A DNA stretch of 64,000 bases from Stegostoma tigrinum (Eukaryota). The position numbers were made by a program, and so were the translations under genes. Positions 18,485-58,185 of the stretch are shown here, piece by piece. The notes under the pieces were generated by a model. That model ran no database searches. It was not told the origin of the DNA and saw only the letters and a program-made list of their open reading frames with translations. Position 1 is the stretch's first letter. The number at the start of each line of letters is the position of its first letter. The stretch covers positions 10,206,035-10,270,034 of the forward strand of contig NC_081369.1 in NCBI RefSeq assembly GCF_030684315.1, in the 5' to 3' direction.

Positions 18485-18790
18485 CCCCCGAAGCAACTTC
18501 GAGTAAAGTGAAACAGTTCCCCAAATTTGAGAACGTTAACAGAGGTGGGAATGTTTCCATGTTCTGCACATTTCCTATCTTTGAAGAAGCTCCTGATGTT
18601 TATTGGCGGAGACGGGGTGAGGAGTCGGTTCTGGAGCCAGACAGCAGAAAGCAATTCAATGCAAAAAGGGGAACAAGTTCTTTTTCAATCCTAAACGTGA
18701 GTTTCGCTGATGCCGGAGTGTATTTTTGTGAAGTAAAGCACCAGGGAAGGTGGATTGGAGATGGAGGTGGCACGCAGCTGACTGTTTATG
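18485..18790 (+). CDS. Gene A exon: germline-joined VJ-type Ig V domain (NKp30/NCR3- or SIRP-like IgSF receptor)
   Basis: Acceptor ttctttctcttctgatAG and donor GTAAG, phase 1/1. MFC(B strand), VYW(C strand), DAGVYFC(F strand) and J-like GDGGGTQLTV. Confidence 0.92.
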
Positions 18791-19621
18791 GTAAGGATCA
18801 TTGTGCCGGACAGGCTACTTTTCAGCTTTATTAGATACTTTATATCGCGGGACGAAAATTGTCCGAATTGCTTTTACTTGGGTTTGTACTTTCTTTGTCA
18901 TTGTACTTGTGTTAAATAGCAATTGATTCAGTCTCACAATATGAACACATGTCTGAGACCAATTTCACTTGCTTGCTGTCCTGATATTTGCAAGGGTTCT
19001 ACCTCGAAAAGTTTTATTTTTGTCCAGTTACAACTATTATCAAGCCAAGATACCGAAATAAAATAAAAGTTCAAATTTAGGTTTGAAATGAATCAATGCG
19101 CTAAGAGGACAACGTCAATTCAACGGGGCCAATGTGCGACAGTGGGATCAATTCTAACATCTCTTGGGTCTTATCTTTCTCCCTCCTTTATTTACACAAA
19201 TCCAGGGCTAAGGAATGATAGAATTCTGATTCTTGACTACGCACTTAATGCAGTTCTGATGGCCATAATATGTAATGAATCTTGCAAATTGATAATGATT
19301 TTAATTTATACTTGGAAAATTTCTGAAAAGTGTGATCGTAAAGAAAGCATTGAAATTGTTCTCAAGAGTTTCACAAATGATGGAAATTTAACATGGTCCC
19401 ATATATCAGGTTACATGACGCCTATACACAGATTTTCATCTATTAGAGGTAAAAATAGGGCTGATAAAAGCAGAGGGGGAAACGAGCCCAATAGGCAGAA
19501 TGAACTTAGATAAATTCAAAAACTCTGGAACTTCATAATGCCTCAGAGTTAGAATTTTCCATGTTGAATTCTGCATCTGTGCAGTTGTTATGAACTTCAC
19601 ACTGATCAGCAATTCATAAAA

Positions 19622-19960
19622 GCTACAGGGGAGGCGATGGCCTCGTAGTATTATGGCTGGCGTATTCATCCGGAGACCCAGATGAACGTTTGGGGACACA
19701 TGTTCAAATCCTGACACTGCAGACCACTCCAGCAATAAACATCAGGCATTAAGAATCAATTGTTAATTTTTGTGAAAATTCCATCTGTTTCACAATTTTT
19801 TTAGAGCAGCGACTGCCAACCTTTCCTGGTCTGACCTACATGTGACTCCAGCCCCACTGCAAAGTGGTTGACTCTTAACTGTCCTCTGGGCAGTTAGTGA
19901 TGGGCAATAGATACTGCCTGGCCAGCGAAGCCCTCGTCCCGTGAATGAGTAAAGAATAGG
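19622..19960 (+). mobile_element. tRNA-derived SINE in gene A intron, absent from the corresponding gene B intron
   Basis: gggaggcgatggcctcgtagtatta...gttcaaatcc head and LINE-type tail. Same family on the minus strand at about 34155-34590. Confidence 0.6.
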
Positions 19961-20641
19961 ATAGAGCCAGAGAAGCCGTTCCGATTAGTGGAGAGCAAGC
20001 ACAGGATGCGGATTTCAGATAATTTGCAAAATAGTAAGGTACCACGGTCGGAAAATCTTCCAAAGAAGCTGTTCGAGGATCTGGAGCGCACTGCGGAAGA
20101 ATCCGGTGCAATTGTGGTGTTCAAAAGGCAAAGTTAAGAAAGGGATGGAACCAACAACGTCAATTGCAGTGGGGTCTGGCAGCATTTGTGGAGAGAAATG
20201 GAGTTAAGGTTTCCAGTTTGGTTAGACTCTTCTTCACGAGATGTTTTGAGCATTGTGTGAGACAAAATATTTCGTACCACAAACCATCATACATGCAGTA
20301 TGGAGAGAGAGACTTCAGTGACAGACTGGCGTGTACTGCCTCCAATAGTTTGGTCAGGAATGCGACTGTCGCTAACCCCAACCCGGCTCCAGGATGTCAT
20401 TCAGAACACTGCCCCGGCCTCCCTCGTGTAACCAATCCTGGGAGATCCAACATCTTAGTTTATCATTTCACAAATTCCCACTATTTTGTTGTCCGGCTGC
20501 AACACTTCAACATTTCAAATTAAACGATAAAGAGCATGAGTATTGTCACTCTATGAACGTAACAGCGTCGCGGGTGCAGTCAAATGAGGATGTGCTCAAT
20601 TAAATTTAAACAAAACAGAAACTGTTTCTTTTTCCTTCAAG

Positions 20642-20935
20642 TGTCACCGTTGCCACTGAAAGTCGTTCAAGTTGAAGGGGTTTCTGCGGCTTCTGTGAAA
20701 CTGGTGTGTAAAACTGCTGCCTGTTACCCTGAACCTATCGGTATCTCCTGGCGAAGCGATGCTGCCGAAAATCTGACCGGAATACAAACGGTTATAAAGA
20801 CGGCAGATGGACTGTATGAGGTTTCCAGCTCTTTGGAAGAAACGCAGCCTGTGCGGAGCGGAGAGGTTTATACCTGTCTGGTGTCACATGTTTCCCTTCC
20901 TGAACCCGCCAGTGTCAACTTCACCGTCAATCCAG
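20642..20935 (+). CDS. Gene A exon: Ig C1-set domain
   Basis: Acceptor ttccttcaAG and donor GTAAG, phase 1/1. LVCKTAACYPEPIGISW, DGLYEVSSSL and YTCLVSHVSL are C1-set hallmarks. Confidence 0.92.
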
Positions 20936-21319
20936 GTAAGGCAGGAAACACTGGCAGCAGTGAGAGGGACCAGTGCTCCAAGCAGCGTTTAGAGAGGCAG
21001 CATGCAGCTGAGCAGCTTCCAAACCAGAGGGAGGGGTTGAGCGTGGAAAGTATCAACTCGCAAAGCGCCACAAATGGGAAAAGAATCAAGATATTCCTCA
21101 ATTTTTTAATCGAGTAAAATGAAATTACAACTAAAATGTTCTGTGATAATCCCTCCTAGGTCCTATGCCACATATCCTGAATATGTGAAAATATAGATAC
21201 GTTCAGCTGGTTTCTCAGCACTGTGAACTCTAACTCTCTCGCCCTAAACGCCTACGCCTCTCTAACTGTCTCGTTTCACACGCTCCCTAAAATCTGCCTT
21301 AACTTTTTCTGACTCATAA

Positions 21320-23850
21320 TGAAAACTGCAGATGCTATAAATTTGAACTAAAACGAGAATTTTCTGGAGAAACTCAGCAGTACTGCCAGCATCTCTGGAG
21401 AGAACGCACAGTTAATATTTCGAATCCAGTGACCGTTTTTCAGAACTAATGACAGCTAGAAAAAGATAGTGTTTACGCTGAAGGCAGGTTTAGGGTGGGG
21501 GCGGAGACGGAGCCTAAAGGAATTGACAGTTGGCCAGGCAAACGGGTGGATGATAACATGCCAGGGAGAGTGAAAAGCTGAAAATGAGGACCGTAAGTCC
21601 GTGAAATTCTCTTGGCTGTGTTGAAAGCAGCTCATGTGACGGCAGGACGTGGGGTGTGGGGATGGGTAAAGGACATGGAAGGAATACTCAGGCCCTAAAA
21701 TTATTGAATTCATTGTTCAGTCCCGAAAGCTGCAGTTCCTCGTGCGGAAAATGAGTTTCTGTTCCTCCAGCTTGCACTGAGCTTCATTGGAGCAGTTCAG
21801 CAGTCCCGAGGTGGAAATGTTAGCTGCGAGCATGACAGTCTGCTGCAGACGCAAAAGGTTGGCAGATCAGCGGACAGTTTTGGAGACAGACCATAAGTGT
21901 TCTGCAAACCAGTCTGTGTTTCGTCTCCACAGTGTAGGGGTGACCACATTATGAGCAACGAATATGATTGAGTGAAGAGCAGGAAAATCCCTGTTCCACC
22001 TGCAAGGTGCATCTGAGACCTTGGATAATGATGGTGGAGAAAGTAAACAGGAAAGTGTTCCACCTTCTTTGTTTGCATGGCAAGGTGACGTGGGAGTGTA
22101 AGGGACTATTGTGAGTGGAGGATGAGTGGGCTGGGGTGACAATGTCCTGACAAAGGAGGGAGGCTGAATGTTTGTCTGCTGGTTGCATCCACAGATGGTA
22201 CCATAAATGATGAGTTTTGATCTTTCTCTTGGAAATTGAGGACAAATAGAACCCTATCATTATTGAGGGAGTGAAGAAGATGAGTGAGGCAGATGTGGGG
22301 GAGATGCATCAGACATGGTTGAGGGCTGTCTTAAGCATGGGAGCAGGGAATCCTCAGTTGAAAAAACATGGTGGACATTTCTGTGATATGAAAGTAGCAT
22401 CATCACAACAGACATGCTGTACATGGAAAAACTGAGAGAACAGAATGAAGTATTTACAGGAATTGACATGTGAAGATAAATAGCCAGAGTAATTGGGCTT
22501 GTACTGAATACTGGTGCCCAGACTAAGCCGGAATGGAAACACAAATGTTGAGAAAGTGATGCGGGGAATAAGAGATGGACCAGCTTAAAGTGAGAGCAGG
22601 GTGGAAATTGAAAGCAAAATTGATAACTTTTTCCAGGTTTGGATGAGAGAGGGGAGCAGCACCAATGAAGTCATCGATGAACTGGAAAAAGAGTTGTGGG
22701 AGGGACCTGAGTGGGATTGGAACATGGAATGGCCCGAGTATCCATCAAGGACACAGGCAAAACTGAAGATTATGCCAGTGTCAATGGCCAAACATTTGAT
22801 TTGAAGAAGCTCAGAGGAATTAAAGGAGAAGATGTTCAAAGTGAGGACGAGATTGCCAGGTGGAGGGTGTGATGGATGATTATGGTTCAGTCTTTTTCTC
22901 CAAGAAGAAGGGGTTTCCCTAAAACCATCATAATAGTGAAGAATGTGTAAAGGGATTGCACATCCGTTGTGAAGATGAGGTAGTTGCTGCCACAAACTGG
23001 AAATTCCGAACTGATGTAAAGTGTCAAATGAATCAGTGGGAAGGGACCTGAGAAAGGGGTCAAGGTAGGAAAGCATAAAATCTGTGTGGCAGTAACAGGC
23101 AGAAACAATTGTTCTCCCCAGCAAGTTATATTGCTGGATTTGAGTTAGAAGATAGAAGCAGGCTCTATATGTTGGTGGAGCATACGTTTTAAGTCTATGG
23201 CAAGGAGACTACCAGATTCCCAGCCCAGTCACTTCCTCCCTCCTCACCAGCTAATCCTCCAGACACAACTTCCAAGTGAAGCAGTGATTTACCTTCTTGT
23301 TACTCTGTTCACTGGTCAGTGTCGTCTCCTGTACACTGTGGAGACAAAACACGGATTGGGCAATTGCTTTGCAGAAAACCTTCATTCTGTCCTCAAAAAT
23401 GACATTGAACTTCCAACTGCCTGCTATTCAACACACCTCCATGCTCCATGGTCAACATTTCTGCCTCAGGCCTGCTGTAGTGTTCTAGCAAGCCTCAGTA
23501 CAAGCTGGAAGAACAGTTTAATTTTCAAACTGGGGACATTGCAGCCGTCAGAATCAACATCGAGTTCAATAATTTTAGTGTCGGAATACTACGTCCATGT
23601 CCTTTACCCACCCTCGCACCCCAGGTCCTGCCAATGACATGAACCGCTTTCAGCAGAGCCAAGCCATTTTCATCTAGTTATGATCACAATTTTCCGTTTT
23701 TCTGCCTTCCTGACATGTTGTCATCCATCCCTTTGTTTGTCCAGCTGTTGTTTTCTCTTTTTTGGGCTCTATCGCTGCCTATTCGCTCACTTTTTCCCCA
23801 CTCCCACTTCCTACACCATCTGAGTTTCTCCAGCAGTTTCTGTTTCTGAT
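21320..23850. mobile_element. Decayed Penelope-like element, RT remnant on minus plus an inverted terminal part
   Basis: PLE RT remnants (LVLTLNIFSFNSS..LQIKCLAIDT; FTTDVQSLYT) and GIY-YIG-like remnants. PLE termini at both ends in opposite orientation. Confidence 0.75.
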
Positions 23851-24346
23851 CCACAAGTTCTAATGCGCTTTGTGTGGCTGGTTTATGTTTGATGACGGTA
23901 CTCTGGAGTGCAATGGACAGTTTGTCATGGTAAAGGAGTTAAATAAATGCAAGGTGCGTGTTTCAATTGCCAAAAGTTACAGTAGGTGTTAAACCTGATT
24001 ACGTGTTTCAGCTGGCGCTGACCTAACACAACAAGATTAATAACGTGTAAGAGTTTTTCCTCTTAAGAAACAAACCGAAGTGAAGATTTCTGAGTCTCTG
24101 TGGAATTGTTGCCTCCACATATTTTATTGTGGGTTAGGGGCTAGTTTGTCATTTCAGACACATTATAATTCTTGTACACATGCTACCCATTGAAATAATA
24201 GAGATCAATCTCTATTGACATTTATTGAACATTATCGTCCTGGGATACCACTTTGCAGACCACCCTCCTGTATCTGACCCACGATTCTCTCTGTTCAAAT
24301 CTCGCTGTATTCTGCAGTTCTTACTCAAATATTATTGATCCTGTAG

Positions 24347-24451
24347 GTGAAGATCTCAACTATGTGCTGATCGCTCGATGGGCAGGTGGCATGCTGGCAA
24401 TCTTACTATTGATAATCATTTTGACAAGCCTCGAAGTGAAGGCATCAGCTG
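24347..24451 (+). CDS. Gene A exon: transmembrane segment with Arg (activating-type)
   Basis: cctgtAG...G/GTAAG, 105 nt, GEDLNYVLIARWAGGMLAILLLIIILTSLEVKASA. Arg codon at 24376-24378. Confidence 0.88.
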
Positions 24452-24869
24452 GTAAGAACTTTTGCTGCTTTGCTGACTATTTTTATTTTCCAAATACAAT
24501 CGTACTTGTTAGAGACATAAAGAGCAGATGAAAGTGATTAACTATAGAGGAATAGTGAGCACTTTCCGACAGCTTTAAATACTGAAATTGATATCACAAG
24601 TAGTTATGTGATTAGCGATTCAACATGGTTATATAAACCGGATTTATTTCAAACCCACGTTTGACTGTTTACTCGAACCCTCCAGTTCTACAACTGGCAG
24701 TGTAACTGTATTCATTTTAAAGTGATATCAGAGTAGCCAACTGGAATAACTGCACAGAGGCTGGCATCCCGTTACAGAGTCACCCTTTATTCACATGTGC
24801 ACCGCACCCTAACTGTGGCCATCCAGCTCAGAGACAGTCCCTGAAGTGAGGAGATCCTGAATCCCTTGG

Positions 24870-26090
24870 TTTTTTTTAATTTTTATAGGTGTGCAAACAA
24901 CATTTTTTTACCTGCCACCACCAGGAAAAAACACAAATGTGACGAAAGCACCAAGATCAAGCAGAGCCCCAAGGGGCAATGCCTGTGTGAGAGAAAAAAT
25001 AAAGTGATGGTGGGTGTAAATCAAAATGGAGCTTGTGTGGGGAAATAAGGCACTGCACAGTCCGCGGTGCCCACCTCTCCCGAAAGGCATCAAGAGCACG
25101 GGTGCGCACCACGTACTCCTTCACCAGAGTCACCCAGGCACGGACGCAGCCACAGAACAGGGACAGGCGGTTGGACATAACGACTACCTCCACATCCGGC
25201 TGCCTGGATCTATTAATGGCCAGCTTCGCCAGGGCTAGGAGCAAACCCACGAAAATTTCCTATGGCAGGCTTCGTCTCCCTCTGCAACTGATGCCCAAAG
25301 ATCAGGAGCGTGGGGCTGAAGTGCAGCCCAAAAACACAAAAGGAGGTCTTTCAGGTAATTCAAAAAGGTGTGGAAGCGCCCACATGCAACATATACATGA
25401 CCCACGGGCTCCACAGCGCAGAAAAACAGACAGTTGGTCCAGGAGTCCATGAACCAACACAACCTGCGTTTTACACGGGACCGCTGCATGCAACACCTTC
25501 CACCACCGATCCCCGAGGGAAAGAGGAAGGACGCCTGCGTAGAGGGCCTTCCAATGGGGATCCCCGCCGCCCGGTGACAAATGAGCATTGCAAGGCGTTT
25601 CCGGGTGTGGGATGAAGGAGAAGAGGTGGATGGTGTGCATCAGCTGTCTGTGCACGGTTTGCCGTTTCACATCTTCTTAGGATACAAATGTGAAATTCCG
25701 GAAGTGGCTCATGTTGTGGGGCACAGGCTCCCGGGGGAGGTACGGGATTCTTGGGCCAGCATGAAATTCCATCTGAGGAGCGGTACCCACAGATGGGATC
25801 TAAACGCACACTTGAGAGTCCACCAACTGGTGCACAATGGAAGAGTCCGAGCACCGCCGTTTTAAGGCATTGAATGACGGCCGCGAATCGGATGTCCACC
25901 ACAGTTCTGCATGCCAATCCCTGTGGCAGCATCCAGCCCAGATCCCTGCCACCTAGCACATCCCCGACGCTTGTCACTCCCGCAGCCACGGCCCTCCCCT
26001 CCAACAGACAATCGACCTGGCGACCACGAAGGTGCTAATTCCTTAGCAGTGGCACTCCTACCGGTGGTAGGCGCGATGTGACTCAACCAT
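24870..26090 (-). mobile_element. Tx1/L1-clade LINE, 3' part
   Basis: ORF2 C-terminal-like peptides GLLLALAKLAINRSRQ and ALDAFRERWAP, a Cys/His region, and a T-rich (polyA) end near 24870. Confidence 0.7.
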
Positions 26091-29000: not shown

Positions 29001-29989
29001 CATTCAGGTATAACACCTTCAGTCCTGTATTAACTGTCCCACTTTTCATTGTTACTCATTTAACCAGTGTGCTTGAAGTTTGATTTCTAACCCCTTACAA
29101 ACATTCTGTCCTATTTGTGTCTATGTTGGAGACTTCAATAACCTCTCCTAAGTTTTCCTTTCCCGTCATTTTTATTTTTCATATTTTTCCACGCAGTGGA
29201 ATCTACCCCTGCAGATGTTAGTCTGCTGCTTTGTTCCCCACTGGGACAAGTTTTATCCTTCCCTTCCCTTCACACCCCACTTTCTAGTTTAATGTCCCAT
29301 TGACCAGTCTATTTACCCTTTTCGCTAGAACATTGGTCTCAGCTTGGCTCAGGTGAAGACCATCCCAGCGGTACAGATCCCTCATGTTCCAAAACTGATG
29401 CCAGTGCCACATGAAAAGGAACCCCTCTTTCCTGCACCACACTTTTACCCACGTGTTTATTTCCCATATTCTCGGGTCCCCATGGCAATTTGCACATGGC
29501 TCTGGCAGTAAGTCAGAGACTATAACCTTGAGGGCCTGTTCTTTAATTTCATGTATAGCTCCTGATTCGCAGTGAACAGGACCTCTTTCCTAATCTTGCC
29601 TATGCTGTTTGTTTGGTGTAGACCACAACAACTGGATCCTCTCCCTTCTTCTCCAATATCCTTTCAAGGTGGTCATAGATATCCCTTACCCTGGCAATGG
29701 GCAAGCAACACACCATACAGGACTGTTGAGCCTGCTTACAAAGTATACTATTTATTCCCCTGACTATAGATTCCCCTACAACTACCACTTGTATTTTTGC
29801 TACCCCCCATGCATGGCATCCTGAGCCACGTTGCAGTGGTCAGATGGGTCATCCTCCCTGCAGCCCTTTGCCTCATCCACAATGGGAACAAATAGCTCAC
29901 ACCTGGTGGACAAGGTCAAGAGCTGAGGCTTCTTTGTTCCTGAATGCAGGATCAGTCTACCTGCTTCACTTGCAGTCATACCCTGCTGT

Positions 29990-30477
29990 GGATGTGAGTT
30001 TGCTCGCTGAGCTGGAAGGTTAGTTTTCAGACGTTTCATCACCATTCTACGTAACATCATCAGTGAGCCTCCGACGAAACGCTGGTGTTATGTCACTATC
30101 ACTCGTATCCTTACATACAGATGAGGAAGGACACCACTTTGATTGGGACAACACATCCATCCTAGGACAAGCCAAACAGAGACACGCACGAGAATTCCTA
30201 GAAGCATGACATTCCAACCGGAACTCCATCAACAAACACATTGATTTGGAGCCCATCTACCATCCTCTGAGAAAAAGAACAGGAAATGACATCACCAACC
30301 CAAGGAAACCTAAACATATAAATAGAAAGCGGGATATAACACCAGCGCTTCGTCGGAGGCTCACTGATGATGTTACCTAGAATGGTGACGAAACGTCTGA
30401 AAACTAACCTTCCAGCTCAGTGAGCAAACTCACATCTAGAACCTCAACCTGAGCTACAAATCTTCTCTAAACTCGCT
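29990..30477 (+). mobile_element. Young 5'-truncated PLE with inverted terminal copy and 12-bp flanking duplication, inserted in CR1 ORF1
   Basis: ataccctgctgt at 29978-29989 and 30478-30489. GIY-YIG C-terminal-like peptide HTDEEGHHFDWDNTSILGQAKQRHAREFLEA. Terminal segments are inverted copies. Confidence 0.85.
30361..30400 (+). ncRNA. Minimal hammerhead ribozyme motif (PLE-type)
   Basis: tca-CTGATGA-t-GTTACC-tagaat-GGTGAC-GAAAC-GTC-tga: intact core, 6-bp stem II, 3-bp stem I, palindromic ACGT helix III. Confidence 0.75.
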
Positions 30478-30839
30478 ATACCCTGCTGTCCTTGACCACT
30501 GACCAAATTTGAAGCTCTTAATCTACCAGGTGTGACTGCCTCCTGAAACATAGCGCCCAGTTACTTCTCCCCCTCCCATATATGTCACAGTATTTGAAGC
30601 TCAGGTTCCAGCTCATCAACACTGAGCTGAAGTTCCTCGAACAGCCAACATTTGTTGCAAATATGGCCACCATTGTTCACAATGGGATCAGCCAGCTCCC
30701 ACATCATACAGCGACAACACGTCACCTGCCAGCCATTTCCAGTTTGTTAATTACTTTATTGAATTCATTAAATTTATTGATACTTCTTGGCTGTGTTCTT
30801 TTCCAAATTTAGTGCAAATTCAGATACTGGTAAAAGACA

Positions 30840-32799: not shown

Positions 32800-32852
32800 G
32801 CGTTAGAAGATATTCTGCAAAAGTGGATGAAGCTCAATACCTGGTAAAGTGA
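32800..32852 (+). CDS. Gene A short cytoplasmic, probably terminal, exon GVRRYSAKVDEAQYLVK*
   Basis: Acceptor ttcttttctttcctttAG has the same context as the gene B exon at 56570, phase 1. Homologous to B GISAEVNQAEKA. Possible donor GTAAAG after 32843, or read-through to TGA at 32850-32852. Confidence 0.72.
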
Positions 32853-44791: not shown

Positions 44792-44847
44792 AACGTATGT
44801 CTTCCTTTGTCTTCCTGATCAAGGTCACAAGATCCCTGGCCATCCAA

Positions 44848-48700: not shown

Positions 48701-49119
48701 CTTTTATGTCTGAAATATGTTTGTGATAGTTCCAGTACAGTACATGACTCTACTTGGAATAATTTGGTCAGGTACATTTCGTTGCTGTATGCCCCTTGTC
48801 AAAATCCGTTATATCCTATTTTAGAAGATAATGAAATGCATCTGTAATGTTCTGCATCAGTAAACACTGTGCTGCTCCACTTCGCATGCTAAAACTTTCA
48901 ATAGCTCTTGCATTTTACTTCGCGAAGTTCTTTTCCTGATGTAATTTTGTTAAGCAGGGGACTGAAAGCTTGTCGGCTTAAGAGAGGAAGGCAGATTAGA
49001 ATTAGAACAGCTACTATTGAATAGCCGAGAGGTGCGAGGGACAGAACGGCCTACTCTTTCTCTGTGTGGTGTACACTGGTTTGCAAATATTATCATCGCT
49101 CTTCTTTCTCTTCTGATAG

Positions 49120-49425
49120 CCCCCGAAGCAACTTCGAGTAAAGTGAAACAGTTCCCCAAATTTGAGAGCGTTAACAGAGGTGGGAATGTTTCCATGTTCT
49201 GCACATTTCCTATCTTTGAAGAAGCTCCTGATGTTTATTGGCGGAGACGGGGTGAGGAGTCGGTTCTGGAGCCAGACAGCAGAAAGCAATTCAATGCAAA
49301 ACGGGGAACAAGTTCTTTTTCAATCCTAAAAGTGAGTTTCGCTGATGCCGGAGTGTATTTTTGTGAAGTAAAGCACCAGGGAAGGTGGATTGGAGATGGA
49401 GGTGGCACGCAGCTGACTGTTTATG
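49120..49425 (+). CDS. Gene B exon: germline-joined VJ-type Ig V domain
   Basis: 306 nt, AG/GTAAG, phase 1/1. Three nt differences from the gene A V exon. Confidence 0.92.
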
Positions 49426-49555
49426 GTAAGGATCATTGTACCGGACAGGCTACTTTTCAGCTTTATTAGATACTTACGCTTTTTCTAAATCTCGAACTTT
49501 CTTCGAATTGCTTTTACGCGGGTTTATATTTTCGTTGTCATTGAGCACGTGTTAA

Positions 49556-49772
49556 AACTGCAGATGTTGGAGTCAGAGTAGATACAATGTGGAGCTGGAG
49601 GAAGACAGCAGGTCAGGCAGCTTCAGAGAAGGGCCGACGTTTCGGGCCTAGACCCTTCATTAGAACTTCACGAGTCTTTTTGAAGGATCTCGGCCCGAAA
49701 CGTCGACTCTCCTACTCCTCTGATGCTGCCTGACCTGCTGTGTTCGTCCAACTCCACGCTGTATGGATTCCA
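49556..49772. mobile_element. Older palindromic PLE terminal insertion specific to the gene B V-C1 intron
   Basis: Inverted PLE termini flanked by gttaaa. The corresponding gene A site (about 18910, gtgttaaatagc) is empty. Confidence 0.7.
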
Positions 49773-51078
49773 GTTAAATAACAACTGGTTCACTTTCGCC
49801 ATTTGACCATTTTTGTCTAGAAGCAATTTCACTCGCTTGCTCTCCTGATGGTTGAAAGGGTTCTATCTCCAACAGTTTTATTATAGTCCAGTTGCAATTG
49901 TTTTCAAACCATGATACCGGTAGAATAAAAGTTTAAATTTTGGTTTCAAAAGAACCAGTGAGCGAAGAAAACAAAATCCCTTCTTGCCAAAGTAACGACG
50001 CCAGTATGTGACAATGAATTTATGCAAATCGAGGGTTAAAGAATGACGGAATTCTGAGTCTTAGCTATGCACTTAATGCAGTTCTGTTGGCCATAAGATT
50101 TAAGGAAACTTACAAATTGGTAATGACCTTAATTGATATTTCGAAAATTTCGGGAAGATCTGCATGTAAAGAAAACATTCAAATTGTTTTCAATAATATC
50201 ACAAACAATTCAAAGTTAACAGATCCATATATCAGGTACATAACGCCTATAGATTGTGTGGACACTGTTTCACATCTGTGAGAGGGAAAAATAGGCCGGT
50301 TAAAAGCAGGTTAGAAAAGAGTCCAAGAGACGGAAAGAATTAATAAAAGCTAAGGGTAGTGTGACGCCAGAGAAGCCGTTCAGATTGGTGAAAGGAAAAA
50401 CAGAGGACACACATTTATGATAACGTGCTATACTGTTAGGCACGACAGTCGGAAATATTTAAGTAAAGCTTTTCAAGGATGTGGATTGCACTGCGGGAGC
50501 CTCCGGTGCAACCGTGGCGTTCAAAGGCAAATTTATAATTTCCTAAAAAACAGATTAAAAGCTGTTAAGGATGTGGTGAAAAAGATGAAACCAACAACCA
50601 GAGCGGCAGTAGATCTGGCTGCATTTGTGGGGAGAAATGGAATTAACGTTTCCAGTTTGGTGTGACTCTTCTTCACGAGATGTTTTGAGCAGTGTACGAA
50701 GCAAAATATTTAGTGCCGCAAAGCTTTATTACTGCAGTCAGGAGAGAGAGGATTCAGTGACAGACTGGCGTGTACTGCCTCCGATAGATTTGCTCAGGAA
50801 TCCGACTGTTGCTAGCACCAATCCCGCTCCACGACCTCATTCAGAACAATGTCCCTGCCTCCCTACATGTAACCAGTCCTGGGAGATCCAACCTTTTTGT
50901 TTATCTTTTCAAATATTCGTACAATTTTGCTACAATTTAAAATTTTAATTTTAAAATTAAACGATAAAGAGCATGAGTATTGTCACTGTATGAACGTAAC
51001 AGCGTCGCGGGTGCAGTCAAATGAGGATGTGCTCAATTAAATTTAAACAAAACAGAAACTGTTTCTTTTTCCTTCAAG

Positions 51079-51372
51079 TGTCACCGTTGCCACTGAAAGT
51101 CGTTCAAGTTGAAGGGGTTTCTGCGGCTTCTGTGAAACTGGTGTGTAAAACTGCTGCCTGTTACCCTGAGCCTATTGGTATCTCCTGGCGAAGAGATGCT
51201 GCCGAAAATCTGACCGGAATACAAACGGTTATAAAGACGGCAGATGGACTGTATGAGGTTTCCAGCTCTTTGGAAGAAACGCAGCCTGTGCGGAGCGGAG
51301 AGGTTTATACCTGTCTGGTGTCACATGTTTCCCTTCCTGAACCCGCCAGTGTCAACTTCACTGTCAATCCAG
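51079..51372 (+). CDS. Gene B exon: Ig C1-set domain
   Basis: 294 nt, AG/GTAAG. Four nt differences from gene A C1, giving one amino acid change (S/R). Confidence 0.92.
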
Positions 51373-51559
51373 GTAAGGCAGGAAACATTTGCAGTAGTGA
51401 GAGGGATCAGTGCTCCAACTTGGATTTATAGAGCAGATATATGGCTGAACAGCTGTCCAAATCAAAGAGAGGGGGTGTATGTGGACTTCATTAATTCCAG
51501 AGCAGTATAATGGAAAAGAAATTACAATGTTCAAAATGATTTTCAGTGTAGGATAGAAA

Positions 51560-53190
51560 ATATTCCCCTGAGGAGGTCTGAAAGGGAAGTGATGTGTGAG
51601 CTGCTCGAAAGTTAAAGATCATTCTTCATCAAAATCTTAGCGAGTAAAATGGAATTATACCTACAAATATATTGTAGGAACTTAGGGAAGAAATTGCCCA
51701 GCGTGGGAGAGATCTCCATATCATCTATAACCACTGGTGAGGTGCTGATGGACGAGCGGGTGGATAATATTGTGCCTTTACTTAAGAAAAGAGAAGCCTG
51801 GGAATTATAGACCATTGAATGTGATATCAGTTGAGTAAGTTGTTGGAGGGGGTTTTGAGAGACAGGGTTTGCATGCATTTGGAAAGGCAAGGACTGATTA
51901 GGGATAGTCAGCCGGACTTTGTGTCCGAGAAAATGTGGGCTACTTGGCCAAGAAGATAGATGGAGGGCAGAGTGGTAAATGTTCTGCTTGGTAGACTGGT
52001 CACTAAAGTTAGATTGCATAGCGGGGATCTTGCCCATTGGATACAAAATTGGCTTGATGGTAAAATAGACAGAGGGTAGAGTTGGAGGGTTGTTTTCAGA
52101 CTAGAGATCTGTCACCAATGGTGTTCCACTAGCATTGATGTTGGATCCACTGTTGTTTGTTGTTTATATAAAAAATTTTGATGAAAACTTAGAAAGCATG
52201 ATAAATTTGCAGATGGCATCAAAATTGGTGGTTTCATGGGCAGTGAAAATGGTTATCTAAGATTACAAAGGGATCATGATCAATTGAGCCAATGGGGTAA
52301 TGAATGGCAGATGGAGTTTAATTTCGGTAAATGCAATGTTTTTTACTTGGCAAGACGAACAATTGCAGGATTTATACAATTAATTAGTAGGACCCTGTGG
52401 ATTGTTGCCAAACAAAGATACCTAGGGGTTATGGTATATATTTCTTTGAAAGTTGCATTGCATGAACACAGAGTGGTAAAGAAGGCATTTGGCATGCTTG
52501 TCTTCATTGCTCAGACTATTGAATAAAGAAGTTGGGACATCATGTCATGGTTGTACAGAAGATGGTGAAGCTGCTTTAGAAGTATTGTGCACAGTTCTGG
52601 TCACCCAGTTATAGCAAGGATATTATTAAATTAGAGAGGGCGCTGGAAAGATTTATAAGGATATTACCTGGACCGGGGGATTTGAGTGAAAGGGAGAGGG
52701 TGGATAAACTTGGATTTTTTTTCACTACAGCATAGGTGGTTGAGGGATGACCTTACAGATTAGATTAGATTAGATTCCCTACAGTGTGAAAACACGCCCT
52801 TCGGCCCAGCAAGTCCACACTGTCCTTTGGAGCATCCCACCCAGACCCATCCCCCTATAACACACACACCCCTGAACACTACTGGAAGAAATTGATTAAA
52901 TCATGAGCAGTGTCGATAATGTGAATTGCAAACCTCGTTTTCTTGTGATTGGGGAGTTTGAGCCTGGAGGGCATATTTTTCAGGTCTTAGAGTCTACATT
53001 TTCACACAGGGTGTGGTTGGTATGGAATGAACTGTTGGGGAAATGGCAGATGCAGGCACAATTACAATATTTGGACAGGTGAATGAATAGGAAATTGTTA
53101 GACACAGGTAAATGAGATTAGTTTAGTTTGGGAAACTTGGTCGGTATAGATAATTTGTACTGAAGGGTCTGTTTCCATGTTGTATGGTCC
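51560..53190 (+). mobile_element. Decayed CR1 LINE 3' part in gene B intron
   Basis: LDPLLFVVYI, KFADG and WQMEFNFGKCNV remnants plus a CR1 3' tail. Confidence 0.75.
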
Positions 53191-53239
53191 AAAACTTAAT
53201 AAAAGCTGAATAAGTGATAATAGGATCTATGAGTAGGAG

Positions 53240-54745
53240 CGAATATGTGAGATGCAATTGAAAACAACACATGTCAGGACAAGTGAGGTGGGTAAAAAAA
53301 AATGGAAGGACGAATCAGACTCTAAAGTTCTTTCACTCCATGTTGAGTCCCTGAATGTTTCAGGGTCCCCAAGCAGAAAACTAAATGTTGTTCTTCAAGC
53401 TTGTGCTGAGGTTCACTGGAACACTGCAGCAAGTATGTATTGAAGTGATCGGCAACTCTAGGTCATATTTGTAGAAAGAATGTAAATATTCTGCAAAACT
53501 GTCACACAGCCTGCAATTCGACTCCACAGTGTAGAAGAGACCACATTGTGAGAAATGATACAGTCGGCTATAGTGAGTCAAGTGCAGATAAATCTGCTTC
53601 ACCAAGAATAATATAATTCATAGAACATGGAAGCTACTTCTGGAGCTTTGGATAGTGAGGAGGAAGGGAGAAAACATCCATAAACATGCAGTCATCACAC
53701 CTTTTGCCATTGCATGTGAAGGAGTGGGCCAAAGTGTCCCAGAGGCAATGGTCCAGCAGAAGGCTGGCAAGGGAGGGGAGGGTACATGTGTCTGATGGTG
53801 GCTAATGATCTTTTGAATGTGGATGCTGGTGAAATGGTAGGTGAGCACCAGGAGGCCCTTGACATTGTTGAACAACGGAGAGGTAAGACTGAGGGTCAAA
53901 GTGCAAAAGATGGGTCAAATGCAGCTAAAGGCTCTGAGGACTACAGTGGCAGACATCCACCTTGAGGAGAAAGGTGGCTTTTCTGAAACCCCTGCAGAAG
54001 TTGGCACATCAGAACAAATGTGTTGGAGATAGAGGAAGTGGGTGAATGTGTTGGAGTCCTGGCAGAAGCAGGGTATGAGGATGTAAAGATGAGGTAATTG
54101 TGGGAGTGATGGATTTGTAACAGATATCAGTGGCCAACCCATTCCCAGAAATTGATGTGTTTCCAGTTCAGAGCCAGAAAGGGAAGCAGCACTGATAATT
54201 TCCATCAATATGCTAAAGAAAGAGTTGTGGGTGGGAACTGCAATAGGATTGGAACAAGGAATGTTCCATGTATCCCACAAAGTGACAGGCATAACTGGAG
54301 CCCGTTCAGGTATCCATGGCCACATTACGTTAAGGTATGGGTTGTTTTTAATACAGTAACACGTTCTCAACTACTTTTTGGCTTACTATCACATTATATG
54401 GATTGCTTTCAGTGCAGCTCACCCATTTTTCCTGTTCTTAGTTCGTATTATCATTTTGTCAGCTTTCCGTCTTTCCTAGCCTCCTCTCCATAATGTTCCA
54501 GTTGACTTACCCCATTCACATCTCTCTTTTTGGGCTCCATCTTCACGCATCCACTCACCTATCTCTTCGCCAATTTCGACTTTAGCATAAATGCCACGTG
54601 TTCCTAGCTGCCGACAGTACTGGTGGAGAGCTACAGGGCCGAAATGTCATTCTGCTTTCTTCCCCCAGATGTTGCCAGACCTGCTGAACTTCGCCCGCAA
54701 TTTGTTTTTGTTTCAGATTTCCAGCACCCGTAATTATTTGTGTTG
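53240..54745. mobile_element. Decayed Penelope-like element, positionally equivalent to those upstream of the A and C TM exons
   Basis: PLE RT/GIY-YIG remnants on minus and a terminal repeat remnant on plus. Confidence 0.65.
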
Positions 54746-55364
54746 TTAAGATATATCAGTGCGAGGAGTTAGGTTTAGACCTCTGTTTAAGCACTTAAAG
54801 TATGGAAATGTACGTGTCCATCTGGTATCTCCGCATTATAAACTTCAGATTTCCGGCCCGAAGAACCTTCGCACGTCTTTGCCCCTCTCTCCACTTCCAC
54901 ACTCCCGAACTGTCTCCACCTCCTATTATTACTTTTTGGATCAGGATTGCATTTGATAACGCTGCCATGGAGTCCTCTGGGACGTTTTGCCATGTCATCG
55001 GGTTTTTAGAAAAATGTAATTAACTGCAGAAGGCTGATGAAGGGAAGTCCCATGTAGCACAGCACGTTAATTTTGAAGTAAGTAGGACCTTTTACTGTTG
55101 ACAAACAGTCCAGAGAGAAGCTTCTTGTGTCCTTCTGAAATTGTTCCCTCCATAAATTTGCATTACCGGCCTATAACTGGTTTGTCATTTGAAACACATT
55201 GTCATCCTTGTATATTTACTACCCACAGAAAAGATATTTATGGAACGCTGTGGTCCTGGGATACTCTTTTGCATCTCACCGTCCTGTGTCTACTCCACGA
55301 TGCTCTGCATGTAAGTCCCACTGCGCTATACAGTTTCTTATTCAAATATTTATCAATTCTGTAG

Positions 55365-55469
55365 GTAAAGCTGGCACACTTCCTTTGGTGTTTGGATGGA
55401 CAGGTGGCGTGTTGACAATTTTACTGTTGATATTCGTTTTGACAAGACTCAAATTAAAGACATCATCTG
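55365..55469 (+). CDS. Gene B exon: uncharged transmembrane segment
   Basis: tctgtAG...G/GTAAG, 105 nt, GKAGTLPLVFGWTGGVLTILLLIFVLTRLKLKTSS. Gly (55394-55396) at the position of the gene A Arg. Confidence 0.88.
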
Positions 55470-55599
55470 GTAAGATTCTTTATTATTTCGCCGAATATTG
55501 TCAGTTTCTAAGGCCCTATGTCTTTTTATCTTTATTTTTAAAAATGATTTTAGCGTCTATAAAAAGTCAAAGCGCAGATGAACAGTGATTAACTATTTG

Positions 55600-55911
55600 A
55601 TCAGATTCTCTACAATTCAGAAACAGGCCCTTTGGCTCAATAAGTCCACGCCGACCCTCATAGCATCCCACCCAAACCCATACCCTATTACCCACCTAAC
55701 CTACACATCCACTAACACTACGGGCAATTTAGCATGGCCAATCCACCCAGCCTACACATTTTGGACTGTGGGAGGAAACCGGACCATCCGAAGGAAACCC
55801 ATGCAGGCACGGGGAAAATGTGCAAACTTCCCACGGACAGTCGCCCAACGGTGGAATCAAGTCTGGGTTCCTCGCGCTGTGAGCTTGCTAACCACTGAAT
55901 CACCGTGCCAC
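55600..55911 (-). mobile_element. HE1-type V-SINE
   Basis: Same structure as 10855-11180. Confidence 0.8.
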
Positions 55912-56328
55912 CTTTTTTTTCAAAACCTCATCTTCTGTTTCTCAACTTCTGTTTGTAGAAATTGTAGAGGAATAACGAGCATTTTAAAGAATGAAGTTAC
56001 TATTACAAGACCGCTATGCGGTAGTTCAATAGGACATTATAAACCAAATATGTGGTTTTCTATGTGGATATTTCACCTTCCGATTCAAGATATTTACTCG
56101 ATTTGTACACAAACTCCTGTACTTAAATTAGTAGAGTCCAGGCCTTGAAATATGTTAATTGTGGAATGGTACAGCTTCAATAGCAGTCCAGATTTTCTTT
56201 CAAACGTAACTTTGCAAATGCAAAACGGTCAGTCGACTTATTAACAGTTGGCCACCATCCCTCAGAAGTCTGTTCGATTGAGTATAGCGTCACAAGAGAC
56301 ACTAGAGATACTAGGTTAAAATTGTATC

Positions 56329-56495
56329 AGAGATAATGGGAACTGCAGATGCTGGAGAATCCAAGATAATAAAATGTGAGGCTGGATGAACACAGCAGGC
56401 CAAGCAGCATCAGGTCTAGGCCCGAAATGTCAGCTTTTGTGCTCCTGAGATGCTGCTTGTCCTGCTGTGTTCATCCAGCCTCACATTTTATTATC
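56329..56495. mobile_element. Palindromic PLE terminal insertion with 14-bp flanking duplication
   Basis: agagatactaggtt at 56304-56317 and 56496-56509. Confidence 0.8.
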
Positions 56496-56569
56496 AGAGA
56501 TACTAGGTTGCTGGTTTCGCGTGTACTCTCAGCAAATGATTCAAGTCAGGCTCCTTTTGTTTCCTTTAG

Positions 56570-56604
56570 GCATTTCGGCGGAAGTGAATCAAGCTGAAAA
56601 GGCG
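56570..56604 (+). CDS. Gene B cytoplasmic exon 1 (GISAEVNQAEKA)
   Basis: ttttgtttcctttAG acceptor and GTAGG donor, phase 1/0. Joins the TM exon in frame to the terminal exon. Confidence 0.78.
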
Positions 56605-58065
56605 GTAGGATAACAATGCCTTTTATGTTTTGATAAGAGTGGTTAAGAAAAAATAGCAAGAGTGACTGCAACATCTGAGAACATTAATTAAAACCCACGG
56701 AATCGTAGAACTCAAACAGCCTGTGCGGTACTTTGAAAATAACAATCTAATCAGTGCAATTTCTCACTCTTTACACCGAACCCCTTATTCTTGCGAATAT
56801 TTAATCGCCCGTATTCGTTCTCGATCCGAAGGAAAGAAGTCGCACGTTGTCTAGTCTCTCCAACGGACGGCAGTCCCTCACCCACAATTGCAGAAAATCT
56901 CTTCTGCATCCTTTCCCCTCACCCTTCAAAATGTAGCGGTCAGTATGCAGCACGATGGTTCAACTGAGTTTTAACCAATGGCTTACAGTGCTAAACATAA
57001 ATGATTTGCTTTGGCATACTATAGCATTATTTATAAAGGTCAAGATAACCCTTTGCATTTAGTGAAACATACACTTCCGATTAGGGTACCAGTTGGGTCA
57101 ATCGGCTGGCCTGTGTCAGATTAATGAACACAGCATGGAATTTGAACACTTTCTGACCTGTTCAGGCAGGGCCTGCTGGCTTGCCACACTTTAGGATGAT
57201 TGTATAGGCCATTGAGAAAAGATGATTCTAGGGATCGGTGATCTTATCTATGAAATTAGGTTGTAAGAGTTGCATTGGTCACTGTCACGCAAAGGAGAGT
57301 GAGGATGTGATACAGGGGTCCAAGAGTGTGACAGGTTTAGGTATAATAGACAAGTGAAAAAAACTAATCTCAGTCATTGTACAGAGACTACATGCTAGAG
57401 GTTTTGGGAAAGAGGTTGTGGAATGCTGGGATTTTGGTTTTAAAACTACCTGTGATAACGATACAGAACTTAACGGCCAAGAGGTTACAAGAAACTGAGC
57501 TGAACGCTGATTACAAAAGGAAATCAGAGGGGCACTTTAAATAAATTTGCAGACCTTCACTGCTGAAGCATAGGAGTGGGACAGACTGAAGCGCGCAGGG
57601 GAAAGAGACGAAAAGCTTGATTGACTGTTCCCTCTGCCTCCAACTGACTCCACATATTTTTAAAAGTTGATTGTAACTTATTGAGGGGATGTGGGTGTCA
57701 CTGGCTGGCCAGCATTTAATCTCCATACACAATGACCCTGAAACTGTAGCAGCTCCTTTGGTAGAGGTACATGCATCGTGATATTAAGAAGTCAGTTCTA
57801 TAATCGACCCAGCAACAGTGCAAGAAAAGTTACATTAAAAACCAGCTCTGGATAGTGTGCAACTGGGAAGTGAATGTGCAGGTGATAGCAGTTTCATGGA
57901 ACAACTGTTTGCATGCTTGCTGATGAAAGATGGCACAGGCTTAGGTGGTGCTTTCAAAGTGGTGATTGACAGCAGGAAATTTCATTCCATTCTTATTATT
58001 AAGCTTAATTGCGTCAAGCGATGAACTGATGAACTAACGCATTATATTAAATTTTACTTTCACAG

Positions 58066-58185
58066 ATAGAACAAAGCTATGAAGATAATACAGTGTCTTA
58101 TGCCAAGTTGGATCTTGGTAATTTGAAGCAAGGAACAAAACCTAAACAAGCAGACAACTGTACAGTATATGCAGATGTTAAGTGA
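58066..58185 (+). CDS. Gene B terminal exon with ITIM and ITSM
   Basis: ttttactttcacAG acceptor, phase 0. IEQSYEDNTVSYAKLDLGNLKQGTKPKQADNCTVYADVK*; VSYAKL at 58093-58110 and TVYADV at 58162-58179. Confidence 0.85.
   Translation: MEQSYEDNTVSYAKLDLGNLKQGTKPKQADNCTVYADVK

What the first reader, a model, noticed from the sequence alone, without database searches (positions are those of the whole stretch)
18485..58185. Paired activating/inhibitory VJ-C1 immune receptors in a shark genome
Seen in sequence: two same-strand genes about 30.6 kb apart have virtually identical V and C1 exons but different signalling ends. Gene A has a TM Arg (LIARWAGG) and a short tail with no ITIM. Gene B has Gly at that position (LVFGWTGG) and a spliced tail carrying an ITIM (VSYAKL) and an ITSM (TVYADV). 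All splice phases join in frame, giving about 252 aa for A and 286 aa for B excluding the leader. Established knowledge: a TM Arg couples NKp30, NKp46 and LILRA-type receptors to FcRgamma/CD3zeta, and ITIM+ITSM tails recruit SHP-1/2 (PD-1, BTLA, CD33-related Siglecs). Inference: this is a paired-receptor system, logically like SIRPa/b, Siglec-5/14 or KIR-L/S, built on an antigen-receptor-like VJ-C1 scaffold in a cartilaginous fish. The exons that reveal the pairing are too small to stand out in ORF-level annotation. I cannot confirm that it is undescribed.
Basis: partly seen in the sequence, partly recalled or inferred. Interest (0 to 1): 0.93.

Follow-up and report, generated by a model that had tools for sequence, protein, structure and literature searches.

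The report
Shark paired SIRP-like receptor genes
Two neighbouring shark genes encode almost the same antibody-chain-like outer part, but one ends in an inhibitory tail and the other has a charged membrane anchor with a stub tail. This is the layout of an on/off immune receptor pair, shown here from DNA only.

Summary
All four motifs, all splice phases and both protein lengths (252 and 286 aa without leader) were reproduced. I also found the leader exons.

- **Gene A:** leader, V(J), C1, a TM exon with Arg (LIARWAGG) and a 17-aa tail with no ITIM.
- **Gene B:** leader, V(J), C1, an uncharged TM exon, a 35-nt exon, and a last exon with an ITIM (VSYAKL) and an ITSM (TVYADV) 23 residues apart.
- **Gene conversion:** A and B introns are about 78-82% identical. 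Two tracts covering the V and C1 exons, and running into their upstream introns, are about 98-99% identical.
- **Assembly:** short-read contigs contain both V-exon versions at about double depth, so this is not a mis-assembly.
- **A's tail:** its exon is the homologue of B's 35-nt exon, with a stop three codons past a relic donor. The window holds only one ITIM exon, and it belongs to B.
- **Family:** a multigene family found only in cartilaginous fish. RefSeq models in other species carry inconsistent automatic names (SIRPα-like, tapasin-related-like, NCR3LG1-like). Members with an Arg in the TM and a short tail recur in other sharks and rays.

The scan has noted other genes of this family elsewhere in this genome. 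No RNA data were available, so expression, the small-exon junctions and adaptor coupling remain inferred. This is a new member of a known kind, of moderate interest.

The parts
18078..18132 (+). Gene A leader exon. ATG at 18078, peptide MFITVPVQYVTLLGIIWP plus one carried base, donor CAG|GTACAT.
   Evidence: Found by a scan for ATG...GT in phase 1 with a hydrophobic core, and conserved in B. It matches the leaders of RefSeq homologues such as MSVRASVQYMALLGMVWP and MSIRVTAQYMALLGLIWS.
18485..18790 (+). Gene A V exon with a germline-joined J-like G strand (IGDGGGTQLTVY). Phase 1-1.
   Evidence: Sequence read. Pfam V-set E 1.9e-10. No RSS heptamer or nonamer in or after the exon.
20642..20935 (+). 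Gene A C1-set exon. Phase 1-1.
   Evidence: Sequence read. Pfam C1-set E 1.8e-9.
24347..24451 (+). Gene A transmembrane exon, GEDLNYVLIARWAGGMLAILLLIIILTSLEVKASA(G), with an intramembrane Arg. The Arg codon CGA corresponds to GGA (Gly) in B.
   Evidence: Family TM HMM E 4e-10.
32800..32852 (+). Gene A last exon, (G)VRRYSAKVDEAQYLVK followed by TGA at 32850-32852. It is the homologue of B's 35-nt exon. A relic donor CTG|GTAAAG lies at 32843/32844, and poly(A) signals lie at 32910 and 33128.
   Evidence: It has the best acceptor among phase-1 terminal-exon candidates. It aligns with B 56570-56604, including an identical acceptor TTTCCTTTAGGC.
48717..48771 (+). Gene B leader exon (MFVIVPVQYMTLLGIIWS).
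49120..49425 (+). Gene B V(J) exon. It shares 303 of 306 nt with A, with amino-acid differences N16S and N70K.
51079..51372 (+). Gene B C1 exon. It shares 290 of 294 nt with A, with one amino-acid difference, S38R.
55365..55469 (+). Gene B transmembrane exon, GKAGTLPLVFGWTGGVLTILLLIFVLTRLKLKTSS(G). It is uncharged and keeps a basic stop-transfer sequence.
   Evidence: Family TM HMM E 1.3e-6. It shares 61% of its residues with the Heterodontus P0029 TM exon.
56570..56604 (+). Gene B membrane-proximal cytoplasmic exon (35 nt, ISAEVNQAEKA). It converts phase 1 to phase 0.
   Evidence: Top-scoring candidate internal exon. It parallels the SKKNSEEAGQAKE exon of Heterodontus P0157.
58066..58185 (+). 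Gene B last exon, IEQSYEDNTVSYAKLDLGNLKQGTKPKQADNCTVYADVK followed by TGA. It carries the ITIM VSYAKL and the ITSM TVYADV, with the two tyrosines 23 residues apart. AATAAA lies at 58360.
   Evidence: Family last-exon HMM E 8.7e-8, the only such hit in the window.
18223..18838 (+). Conversion tract 1, matching B at about 48866-49473. It covers the V exon and about 260 nt of the upstream intron at about 98% identity, against about 80% in the flanks.
20517..20950 (+). Conversion tract 2, matching B at about 50954-51387. It covers the C1 exon and about 125 nt of the upstream intron, with 5 differences in 434 nt.
1698..1802 (-). Context: the TM exon of an inverted third copy, GKDLNYLLISRWAGSMLVILQLITIWTSIELKASS. 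It also carries the Arg and belongs to a pseudogene.
   Evidence: Family TM HMM E 4.8e-7. The C1 pseudo-exon at 12227-11925 has two stops. The tail-exon homologue has lost its acceptor, AG to AC.

Best explanation
The window holds a real tandem pair of genes from a multigene family of SIRP-like, non-rearranging V(J)-C1 membrane receptors found only in cartilaginous fish.

Shown: gene B (48717-58185, 304 aa) has the family's standard inhibitory layout. This is an uncharged TM, a small cytoplasmic exon, and a terminal exon with an ITIM and an ITSM 23 residues apart.

Inferred: once phosphorylated, this tail would recruit SHP-1/SHP-2-type phosphatases.

Shown: gene A (18078-32852, 270 aa) has the same ectodomain. 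Its TM exon carries an Arg about five residues into the helix, from a single G-to-C change relative to B. It has lost the basic stop-transfer residues. Its tail stops three codons past the former donor of the small cytoplasmic exon, so it has no tyrosine motif.

Inferred: A is the activating counterpart and signals through an ITAM adaptor with an acidic TM residue. A CD3zeta-, DAP12- or FcRgamma-like chain is possible, but its identity in sharks is open.

Shown: the two ligand-binding exons are kept nearly identical by gene conversion, while the signalling halves stay apart. So both receptors should see the same ligand and give opposite outputs.
For: - **Gene models:** the exon models are reproduced with GT..AG introns and matching phases.
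- **Domains:** Pfam V-set and C1-set. A family profile hits UrIg2 V-C1 (1e-33), SIRPalpha 2wng (6.5e-25) and Ig light chains. An AlphaFold model of a homologue has an ectodomain with pLDDT above 90, and its best Foldseek matches are Ig light chains and TCR beta chains over about 215 columns.
- **Gene conversion:** the two tracts are about 98-99% identical and extend into the introns, against a background of 73-82%.
- **Assembly:** short-read DNA contigs tile gene A. The V and C1 tracts sit at about twice the flanking depth. One contig carries exactly the B variants.
- **A's tail:** its exon is homologous to B's 35-nt exon. The only ITIM exon in the window is B's.
- **Relatives with the same layouts:** Heterodontus P0157 has B's exon plan. 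S. canicula P0160 has an Arg in the TM (LIIGRVGG) and a tail ending after the small exon, like A. Hemitrygon P0101 and Mobula P0199 are further Arg-TM forms with short tails.
- **Constraint on the Arg-type TM exon:** dN/dS between A and the third copy is about 0.3, against about 1.3 between A and B.
- **From established knowledge, not tested here:** an Arg near the outer third of the TM is how NKp30, NKp46, LILRA, FcalphaRI and GPVI bind FcRgamma or CD3zeta. ITIM-ITSM pairs about 23-25 residues apart engage the tandem SH2 domains of SHP-2, as in PD-1 and SIRPalpha.
Against: - There is no RNA evidence. No RNA run was served, and the runs laid are DNA contigs. Expression and the small-exon junctions are therefore predictions.
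- The intact V and C1 reading frames of A could have been refreshed by conversion from B, so they do not prove selection on A.
- The sister copy with the same Arg-type TM is a pseudogene.
- The dN/dS estimate rests on 105 nt.
- A's relic donor at 32843 could in principle splice to an unseen exon.
- A 2014 survey found no FcRgamma homologue in shark genomes (PMC4016189), so the adaptor is unknown.
- A also lacks the usual basic residues after the TM.
Confidence: 0.6

Rival explanations
1. Gene A is a decaying or non-functional duplicate, a young pseudogene. The Arg, the lost stop-transfer residues and the truncated tail are damage. The ectodomain looks intact only because conversion from B keeps overwriting it.
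For: The inverted third copy has the same Arg-type TM and tail region and is clearly dead. It has two stops in C1, a lost acceptor and no V exon. LINE fragments inflate A's last intron to 8.3 kb. A lacks the RLKLK stop-transfer sequence. There is no expression evidence.
Against: All five A exons are open with canonical splice sites, a poly(A) signal and a conserved leader. The Arg-type TM exon shows dN/dS of about 0.3 between A and the third copy. Forms with an Arg in the TM and a short tail are modelled as genes in catshark, stingray and devil ray. That recurrence is the pattern expected of selected activating partners.
Confidence: 0.25
2. Gene A is functional but not an ITAM-coupled activator. 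It could be a tail-less decoy that competes with B for ligand. It could also be a partner chain whose TM Arg pairs with an acidic TM residue of another family member, by analogy with TCR chains.
For: The ectodomain resembles an antigen-receptor chain. The family also has a second anchor type with both Arg and Asp in the TM (P0036, P0162, P0161, P0083). FcRgamma is reported absent from sharks.
Against: There is no membrane-proximal Cys for covalent pairing in A or B. The Arg depth and short tail match adaptor-coupled receptors, from established knowledge. Nothing here tests dimerisation.
Confidence: 0.12
3. A and B are an assembly artefact: collapsed or duplicated haplotypes, or paralogues made identical by polishing.
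For: The V and C1 exons are 99% identical.
Against: The introns between and around the identical tracts are only 73-82% identical, with large indels. The TM exons are 70% identical. Short-read contigs cover A's unique parts without mismatches. They hold both V-exon versions, at about twice the flanking depth in the shared tracts.
Confidence: 0.02

Closest known systems
SIRPalpha / SIRPbeta (signal-regulatory proteins)
   Same: An N-terminal V domain with a J-like G strand is followed by C1-set domains. There are inhibitory members with ITIM/ITSM-type tyrosine pairs and activating members with a basic TM residue and a short tail. The ectodomains of the pair are very similar. SIRP is the closest named family by language-model features (0.95-0.96). 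It is also a strong profile hit (2wng, 6.5e-25), and it is NCBI's commonest automatic name for relatives.
   Different: There is one C1 domain, not two. B has two tail tyrosine motifs, not four. The basic residue is Arg near the outer leaflet, not the Lys that binds DAP12. The profile similarity is no better than to UrIg2 or Ig chains. Orthology and CD47 binding were not tested.
NKp30 (NCR3)
   Same: It has a germline-joined VJ-type domain with a GxGxGT..L.V G strand. Like gene A, it has a TM Arg and a short tail. A C1-skipped Callorhinchus isoform of this family is auto-named NCR3-like (P0191).
   Different: NKp30 has no C1 domain and no ITIM partner gene in mammals. It did not appear among the 60 best solved-structure sequence hits that the tool lists. 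MHC linkage and a B7H6-type ligand could not be tested.
UrIg / UrIg2 and PRARP (non-rearranging VJ-C1 genes)
   Same: These also have a non-rearranging VJ exon followed by C1. UrIg2 is the second-best solved-structure profile hit (1.1e-33). From memory, PRARPs are VJ-C1-TM proteins with ITIM tails.
   Different: UrIg has several C domains and is antibody-like (PMC12227049). No PRARP sequence was available to compare. All 45 close V-domain or profile relatives whose source I looked up were cartilaginous fish.
Other paired IgSF families kept matched by gene conversion (KIR, Siglec-5/14, LILR, NITR, skate MDIR)
   Same: The logic is the same: linked genes, homogenised ligand-binding exons and divergent signalling ends. 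Activating forms derive from inhibitory ones by a TM point change plus tail truncation.
   Different: The domain types differ (C2, I or V only), and these families are unrelated to this one. This comparison rests on established knowledge and was not tested here.

Membership tests
Paired activating/inhibitory IgSF receptors (functional class) | Linked genes with near-identical ectodomains | tested here: met
   V exons share 303 of 306 nt and C1 exons 290 of 294 nt, 30.6 kb apart on the same strand.
Paired activating/inhibitory IgSF receptors (functional class) | One partner with ITIM/ITSM in its tail | tested here: met
   VSYAKL fits (S/I/V/L)xYxx(I/V/L) and TVYADV fits TxYxx(V/I). The tyrosines are 23 aa apart.
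Paired activating/inhibitory IgSF receptors (functional class) | Other partner with a basic TM residue and a short tail without motifs | tested here: met
   LIARWAGG in the TM. The tail is 17 aa with no ITIM, ITSM or ITAM. Read-through of the TM donor would also give a motif-free tail.
Paired activating/inhibitory IgSF receptors (functional class) | Both genes expressed; the activating partner binds an ITAM adaptor; the inhibitory partner binds SHP-1/2 | not testable with these tools
   No RNA run was served and there is no biochemistry.
Cartilaginous-fish SIRP-like VJ-C1 multigene family (unnamed; RefSeq 'PTPNS1-like', 'tapasin-related-like', 'NCR3LG1-like') | Leader, VJ, C1, a GCAGG-type TM, a small cytoplasmic exon and an ITIM/ITSM exon, with sequence similarity throughout | tested here: met
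   The C1 exon is 83% identical to C. punctatum P0001. Over their aligned stretches the V exon is 66-67% identical to P0020 and Heterodontus P0029. HMM hits to the TM and last exons. Same exon plan as P0157.
SIRP family | V domain plus two C1-set domains | tested here: not met
   There is only one C1 exon between the V and TM exons in both genes.
SIRP family | Specific sequence relationship to SIRP rather than to Ig/TCR-like chains in general | tested here: inconclusive
   2wng scores 6.5e-25, but UrIg2 (1e-33) and an IgA heavy chain (1e-34) score higher. Atlas features place SIRP clusters nearest among named ones. No tree with outgroups was built.
SIRP family | Activating member carries a TM Lys (DAP12 type) | tested here: not met
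   Gene A has Arg, not Lys.
NKp30 / NCR3 | Single V(J) domain with no C domain | tested here: not met
   A C1-set exon is present.
NKp30 / NCR3 | TM Arg with a short tail | tested here: met
   Met by gene A only.
NKp30 / NCR3 | MHC linkage and a B7H6-type ligand | not testable with these tools
   The window has no framework genes, and the chromosome context is not available.
Rearranging antigen receptors (Ig/TCR) | Separate V and J segments flanked by recombination signal sequences | tested here: not met
   V and the J-like strand lie in one exon that runs to a GT donor. There is no heptamer or nonamer in or after the exon.
PRARP | Sequence relationship to chicken or bony-vertebrate PRARP genes | not tested
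   No PRARP sequence could be obtained by reference. The paper is not in the held library.

The most novel reading that the evidence does not exclude
In a family of SIRP-like VJ-C1 receptors found only in cartilaginous fish, activating partners have arisen repeatedly from inhibitory genes. Each time the route was a single-base TM change to Arg plus tail truncation. Examples are gene A and the third copy here, catshark P0160 at the neighbouring TM position, and ray forms. Exon-focused gene conversion then keeps each activating ectodomain matched to its inhibitory neighbour. That would place the full paired-receptor arms-race logic, on an antigen-receptor-shaped scaffold, at the base of jawed vertebrates. 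The adaptor may be something other than FcRgamma.
Probability: 0.4. Interest if true: 0.65.

Novelty: new member of a known kind. Interest (0 to 1): 0.5.

Why it matters
Paired activating and inhibitory receptors are thought to evolve under pressure from pathogens that exploit inhibitory receptors. Well-studied cases are mostly mammalian. A clean shark example would show that this evolutionary mechanism was already operating in the oldest living jawed vertebrates, on a V(J)-C1 scaffold like that of antigen receptors. This example has sharp conversion tracts confined to the ligand-binding exons and a one-base origin of the TM Arg. It also gives a concrete handle for asking which ITAM adaptor sharks use. 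Finally, it flags a large family that genome annotation currently scatters under four or five misleading names.

Tried and rejected
- **RNA support:** the one run search returned only four DNA-type runs of one sample. Laying them gave contigs only, with no transcripts.
- **Orthologous locus:** I could not test cross-species conservation of the A-type TM exon.
- **Literature:** searches for a description of this shark family found nothing in the held library (UrIg, NKp30/B7H6, PRARP, non-rearranging + ITIM, SIRP + shark, DAP12/FCER1G). The key papers were not held: Flajnik 2012 (PMC3709836), Ohta and Flajnik 2015 (PMC4594805) and UrIg 2023 (PMC10530332). This absence is not proof that the family is undescribed.
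- **ITIM exon for gene A:** I searched with tblastn using 21 homologues, blastn with word size 7, family HMMs on all six frames, and a motif scan of 32850-47900. None was found.
- **Direct TM-to-last-exon splice in B:** rejected. The acceptor at 58070 scores poorly, and the 35-nt exon has homologues.
- **Haplotype duplication or polishing artefact:** rejected.
- **Joined spliced proteins:** Exons were searched one by one by reference, and lengths were computed from coordinates.

Full report
**Observation.**

Reading the sequence gives canonical exons for both genes.

| Exon | Gene A | Gene B | Size (nt) |
|---|---|---|---|
| V | 18485-18790 | 49120-49425 | 306 |
| C1 | 20642-20935 | 51079-51372 | 294 |
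| TM | 24347-24451 | 55365-55469 | 105 |

These exons are all phase 1-1. The V exons share 303 of 306 nt and the C1 exons 290 of 294 nt. Pfam assigns V-set (E 1.9e-10) and C1-set (E 1.8e-9). The V exon ends in a J-like G strand (IGDGGGTQLTVY) that runs straight to the donor. There is no recombination signal, so the gene does not rearrange.

**Completing the gene models.**

- **Leader exon.** A scan for ATG...GT in phase 1 found a conserved 55-nt exon about 350 nt upstream of each V exon. In A it is 18078-18132 (MFITVPVQYVTLLGIIWP). In B it is 48717-48771. It matches the leaders of RefSeq homologues, such as MSVRASVQYMALLGMVWP in Heterodontus.
- **B's small cytoplasmic exon.** The best candidate internal exon converting phase 1 to phase 0 is 56570-56604 (35 nt, ISAEVNQAEKA).
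- **B's last exon.** It starts at 58066 and encodes IEQSYEDNTVSYAKLDLGNLKQGTKPKQADNCTVYADVK and a stop. AATAAA lies at 58360.
- **A's last exon.** The best phase-1 terminal exon is 32800-32852, (G)VRRYSAKVDEAQYLVK and a stop. Poly(A) signals lie at 32910 and 33128.
- **Totals.** The coding sums are 810 nt (270 aa) for A and 912 nt (304 aa) for B. All introns are GT..AG.

Exons were searched one at a time by reference.

**How A's tail relates to B's.**

A's last exon aligns with B's 35-nt exon. The two share an identical acceptor (TTTCCTTTAGGC) and a matching core (SAKVDEAQ against SAEVNQAE). In A the former donor survives as CTG|GTAAAG, and the reading frame meets TGA three codons past it.

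I looked for an ITIM exon elsewhere in the window in four ways:
- tblastn with 21 homologues;
- blastn with short words;
- a motif scan;
- family HMMs on all six reading frames.

All of them found exactly one ITIM-bearing exon, B's (HMM E 8.7e-8). If A's TM donor were not used, read-through would still give a tail without motifs. So "A has no ITIM" does not depend on the choice of last exon. What cannot be excluded without RNA is long-range splicing from A's relic donor.

**Gene conversion.**

A global alignment of 17.2-21.3 kb with 47.85-51.75 kb shows a background identity of 73-82% with large indels. Two tracts stand out, and both extend well into the upstream introns.

| Tract | Position in A | Identity |
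|---|---|---|
| 1 (V exon) | about 18223-18838 | about 98% |
| 2 (C1 exon) | about 20517-20950 | 5 differences in 434 nt |

Synonymous sites and intron flanks are identical too, so this is conversion and not only purifying selection. The intron between the tracts is about 78% identical, so the two exons were converted separately.

The TM exons are only 70% identical, and dN/dS between them is about 1.3. The ligand-binding half is therefore homogenised while the signalling half is kept apart.

**Assembly check.**

Four runs of one sample hold the locus. All are DNA contigs.
- They tile gene A's unique parts without mismatches.
- The V and C1 tracts sit at about 14-24x, against about 8-12x in the flanks.
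- One 610-nt contig equals A, and another carries exactly the B variants (18533G, 18667C, 18696A).

Both copies exist in the reads. Together with the intron divergence, this rules out haplotype duplication. The runs may come from the same animal as the assembly.

**The family.**

The closest proteins are all from cartilaginous fish. They include Chiloscyllium, Heterodontus, Scyliorhinus, Heptranchias, Mustelus, Carcharodon, Cetorhinus, Mobula, Narcine, Hypanus, Hemitrygon, Pristis, Leucoraja and Callorhinchus. They occur as clusters on single chromosomes.

NCBI's automatic names are inconsistent:
- tyrosine-protein phosphatase non-receptor type substrate 1-like (that is, SIRPalpha-like);
- tapasin-related protein-like;
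- NCR3 ligand 1-like;
- Ig lambda-like;
- NCR3-like, for a C1-skipped isoform.

Three further results place the ectodomain:
- A family profile hits an IgA heavy chain (1.3e-34), UrIg2 V-C1 (1.1e-33), SIRPalpha (6.5e-25) and Ig light chains (about 1e-21).
- Language-model features put SIRP clusters nearest among named ones.
- An AlphaFold model of a homologue has a confident V-C1 ectodomain. Its best Foldseek matches are Ig light chains and TCR beta chains.

But SIRP itself is such a scaffold and is already a classic paired family.

**Does the family support the pairing idea?**

Heterodontus P0157 has B's exact plan: TM, small exon, ITIM/ITSM exon. Most members have an uncharged ..GCAGG.. TM and long tyrosine-motif tails.

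A minority have an Arg in the TM and short tails without motifs:
- catshark P0160 (LIIGRVGG, ending after the small exon like A, with the Arg one position away from A's);
- stingray P0101 (LLISRCVW);
- devil ray P0199 (LILERAAGG);
- a distinct anchor with both Arg and Asp (..ITRLVLGFLVILGLLGIIVDHV..) in several sharks.

In A the Arg is CGA where B has GGA. The inverted third copy in this window (TM exon 1802-1698, LLISRWAGS) shares A's Arg, its altered stop-transfer sequence and its 3' region. It is dead, with stops in C1 and AG changed to AC at the tail exon. Between A and that copy the TM exon has dN 0.15 and dS 0.48. This is weak evidence, from only 105 nt, that the Arg-type anchor was under constraint.

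**Mechanism.**

Shown:
- the gene structures;
- the motifs;
- the conversion tracts;
- family membership.

Inferred from established knowledge:
- B's ITIM and ITSM, 23 residues apart, recruit SHP-1/2 through tandem SH2 domains, as in PD-1 and SIRPalpha.
- A's Arg, about five residues into the helix, binds the TM Asp of an ITAM adaptor, as in NKp30, NKp46, LILRA, FcalphaRI and GPVI.

Caveat: one survey found no FcRgamma in shark genomes (PMC4016189), so the adaptor is open. From memory, CD3zeta exists in sharks, but I could not confirm this in the held library.

**Rivals.**

- A is a young pseudogene propped up by conversion (0.25).
- A is a tail-less decoy or a pairing chain (0.12).
- The pair is an assembly artefact (0.02).

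**Novelty and score.**

I found no paper describing this shark family or its paired organisation in the searchable library, but several key papers were not held. The scan has flagged other genes of the same family elsewhere in this genome.

The locus is a well-formed new member of a known kind, paired IgSF receptors, nearest to SIRP. It has an unusually clear conversion signature but no expression or functional data. Interest 0.5.

Noticed in passing
window 15831-16722 vs 17253-18150: A 98.4% inverted repeat holds a second leader exon on the minus strand (ATG at 15903, MFITVPVQYVTLLGIIWS). It lies head-to-head with gene A's leader and promoter region. It is far more similar to A than B's equivalent region is (about 81%).
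   Followed up: partly
window 550-12230, minus strand: This is the third family copy. It has a C1 pseudo-exon at 12227-11925 with two in-frame stops, an Arg-type TM exon at 1802-1698, and a tail-exon homologue near 600-700 that has lost its acceptor. No V exon was found. Its C1 resembles Chiloscyllium chiPu_0004843 and C. plagiosum P0158, whereas the A/B C1 resembles chiPu_0004844.
   Followed up: partly
window 14495-14841 and 14844-15190: A 347-nt tandem duplicate at 99.4% identity lies between the third copy's C1 remnant and the inverted leader.
   Followed up: no
window 26807-27436 (-), 46135-46509 (-): These are LINE reverse-transcriptase and endonuclease fragments. The first set lies in gene A's TM-to-tail intron, which is 8.3 kb against about 1.1 kb in the third copy.
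   Followed up: partly
window 18696 / 49331 (V exon residue 70): One of only two amino-acid differences between the A and B V domains (N70K) removes an N-x-S glycosylation sequon in B (ILNVSF against ILKVSF). This could tune ligand affinity between the partners.
   Followed up: no
window 20642-20935 and 51079-51372: Both C1 domains carry an extra Cys (KTAACYPEP) where the family consensus has Phe (KTAAFYPE). The C. punctatum orthologue P0001 has it too. A free or interchain cysteine is possible.
   Followed up: no
window 24420-24451 and 1698-1730: Gene A and the third copy have replaced the basic stop-transfer sequence RLKLK with SLEVK and SIELK. This is unusual directly after a TM helix.
   Followed up: no
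homologues P0036, P0162, P0161, P0165, P0083, P0138: A second membrane anchor in the family has both Arg and Asp or Glu in the TM (for example ITRLVLGFLVILGLLGIIVDHV) and a short tail. It is reminiscent of antigen-receptor TM motifs. No such exon is present in this window.
   Followed up: partly
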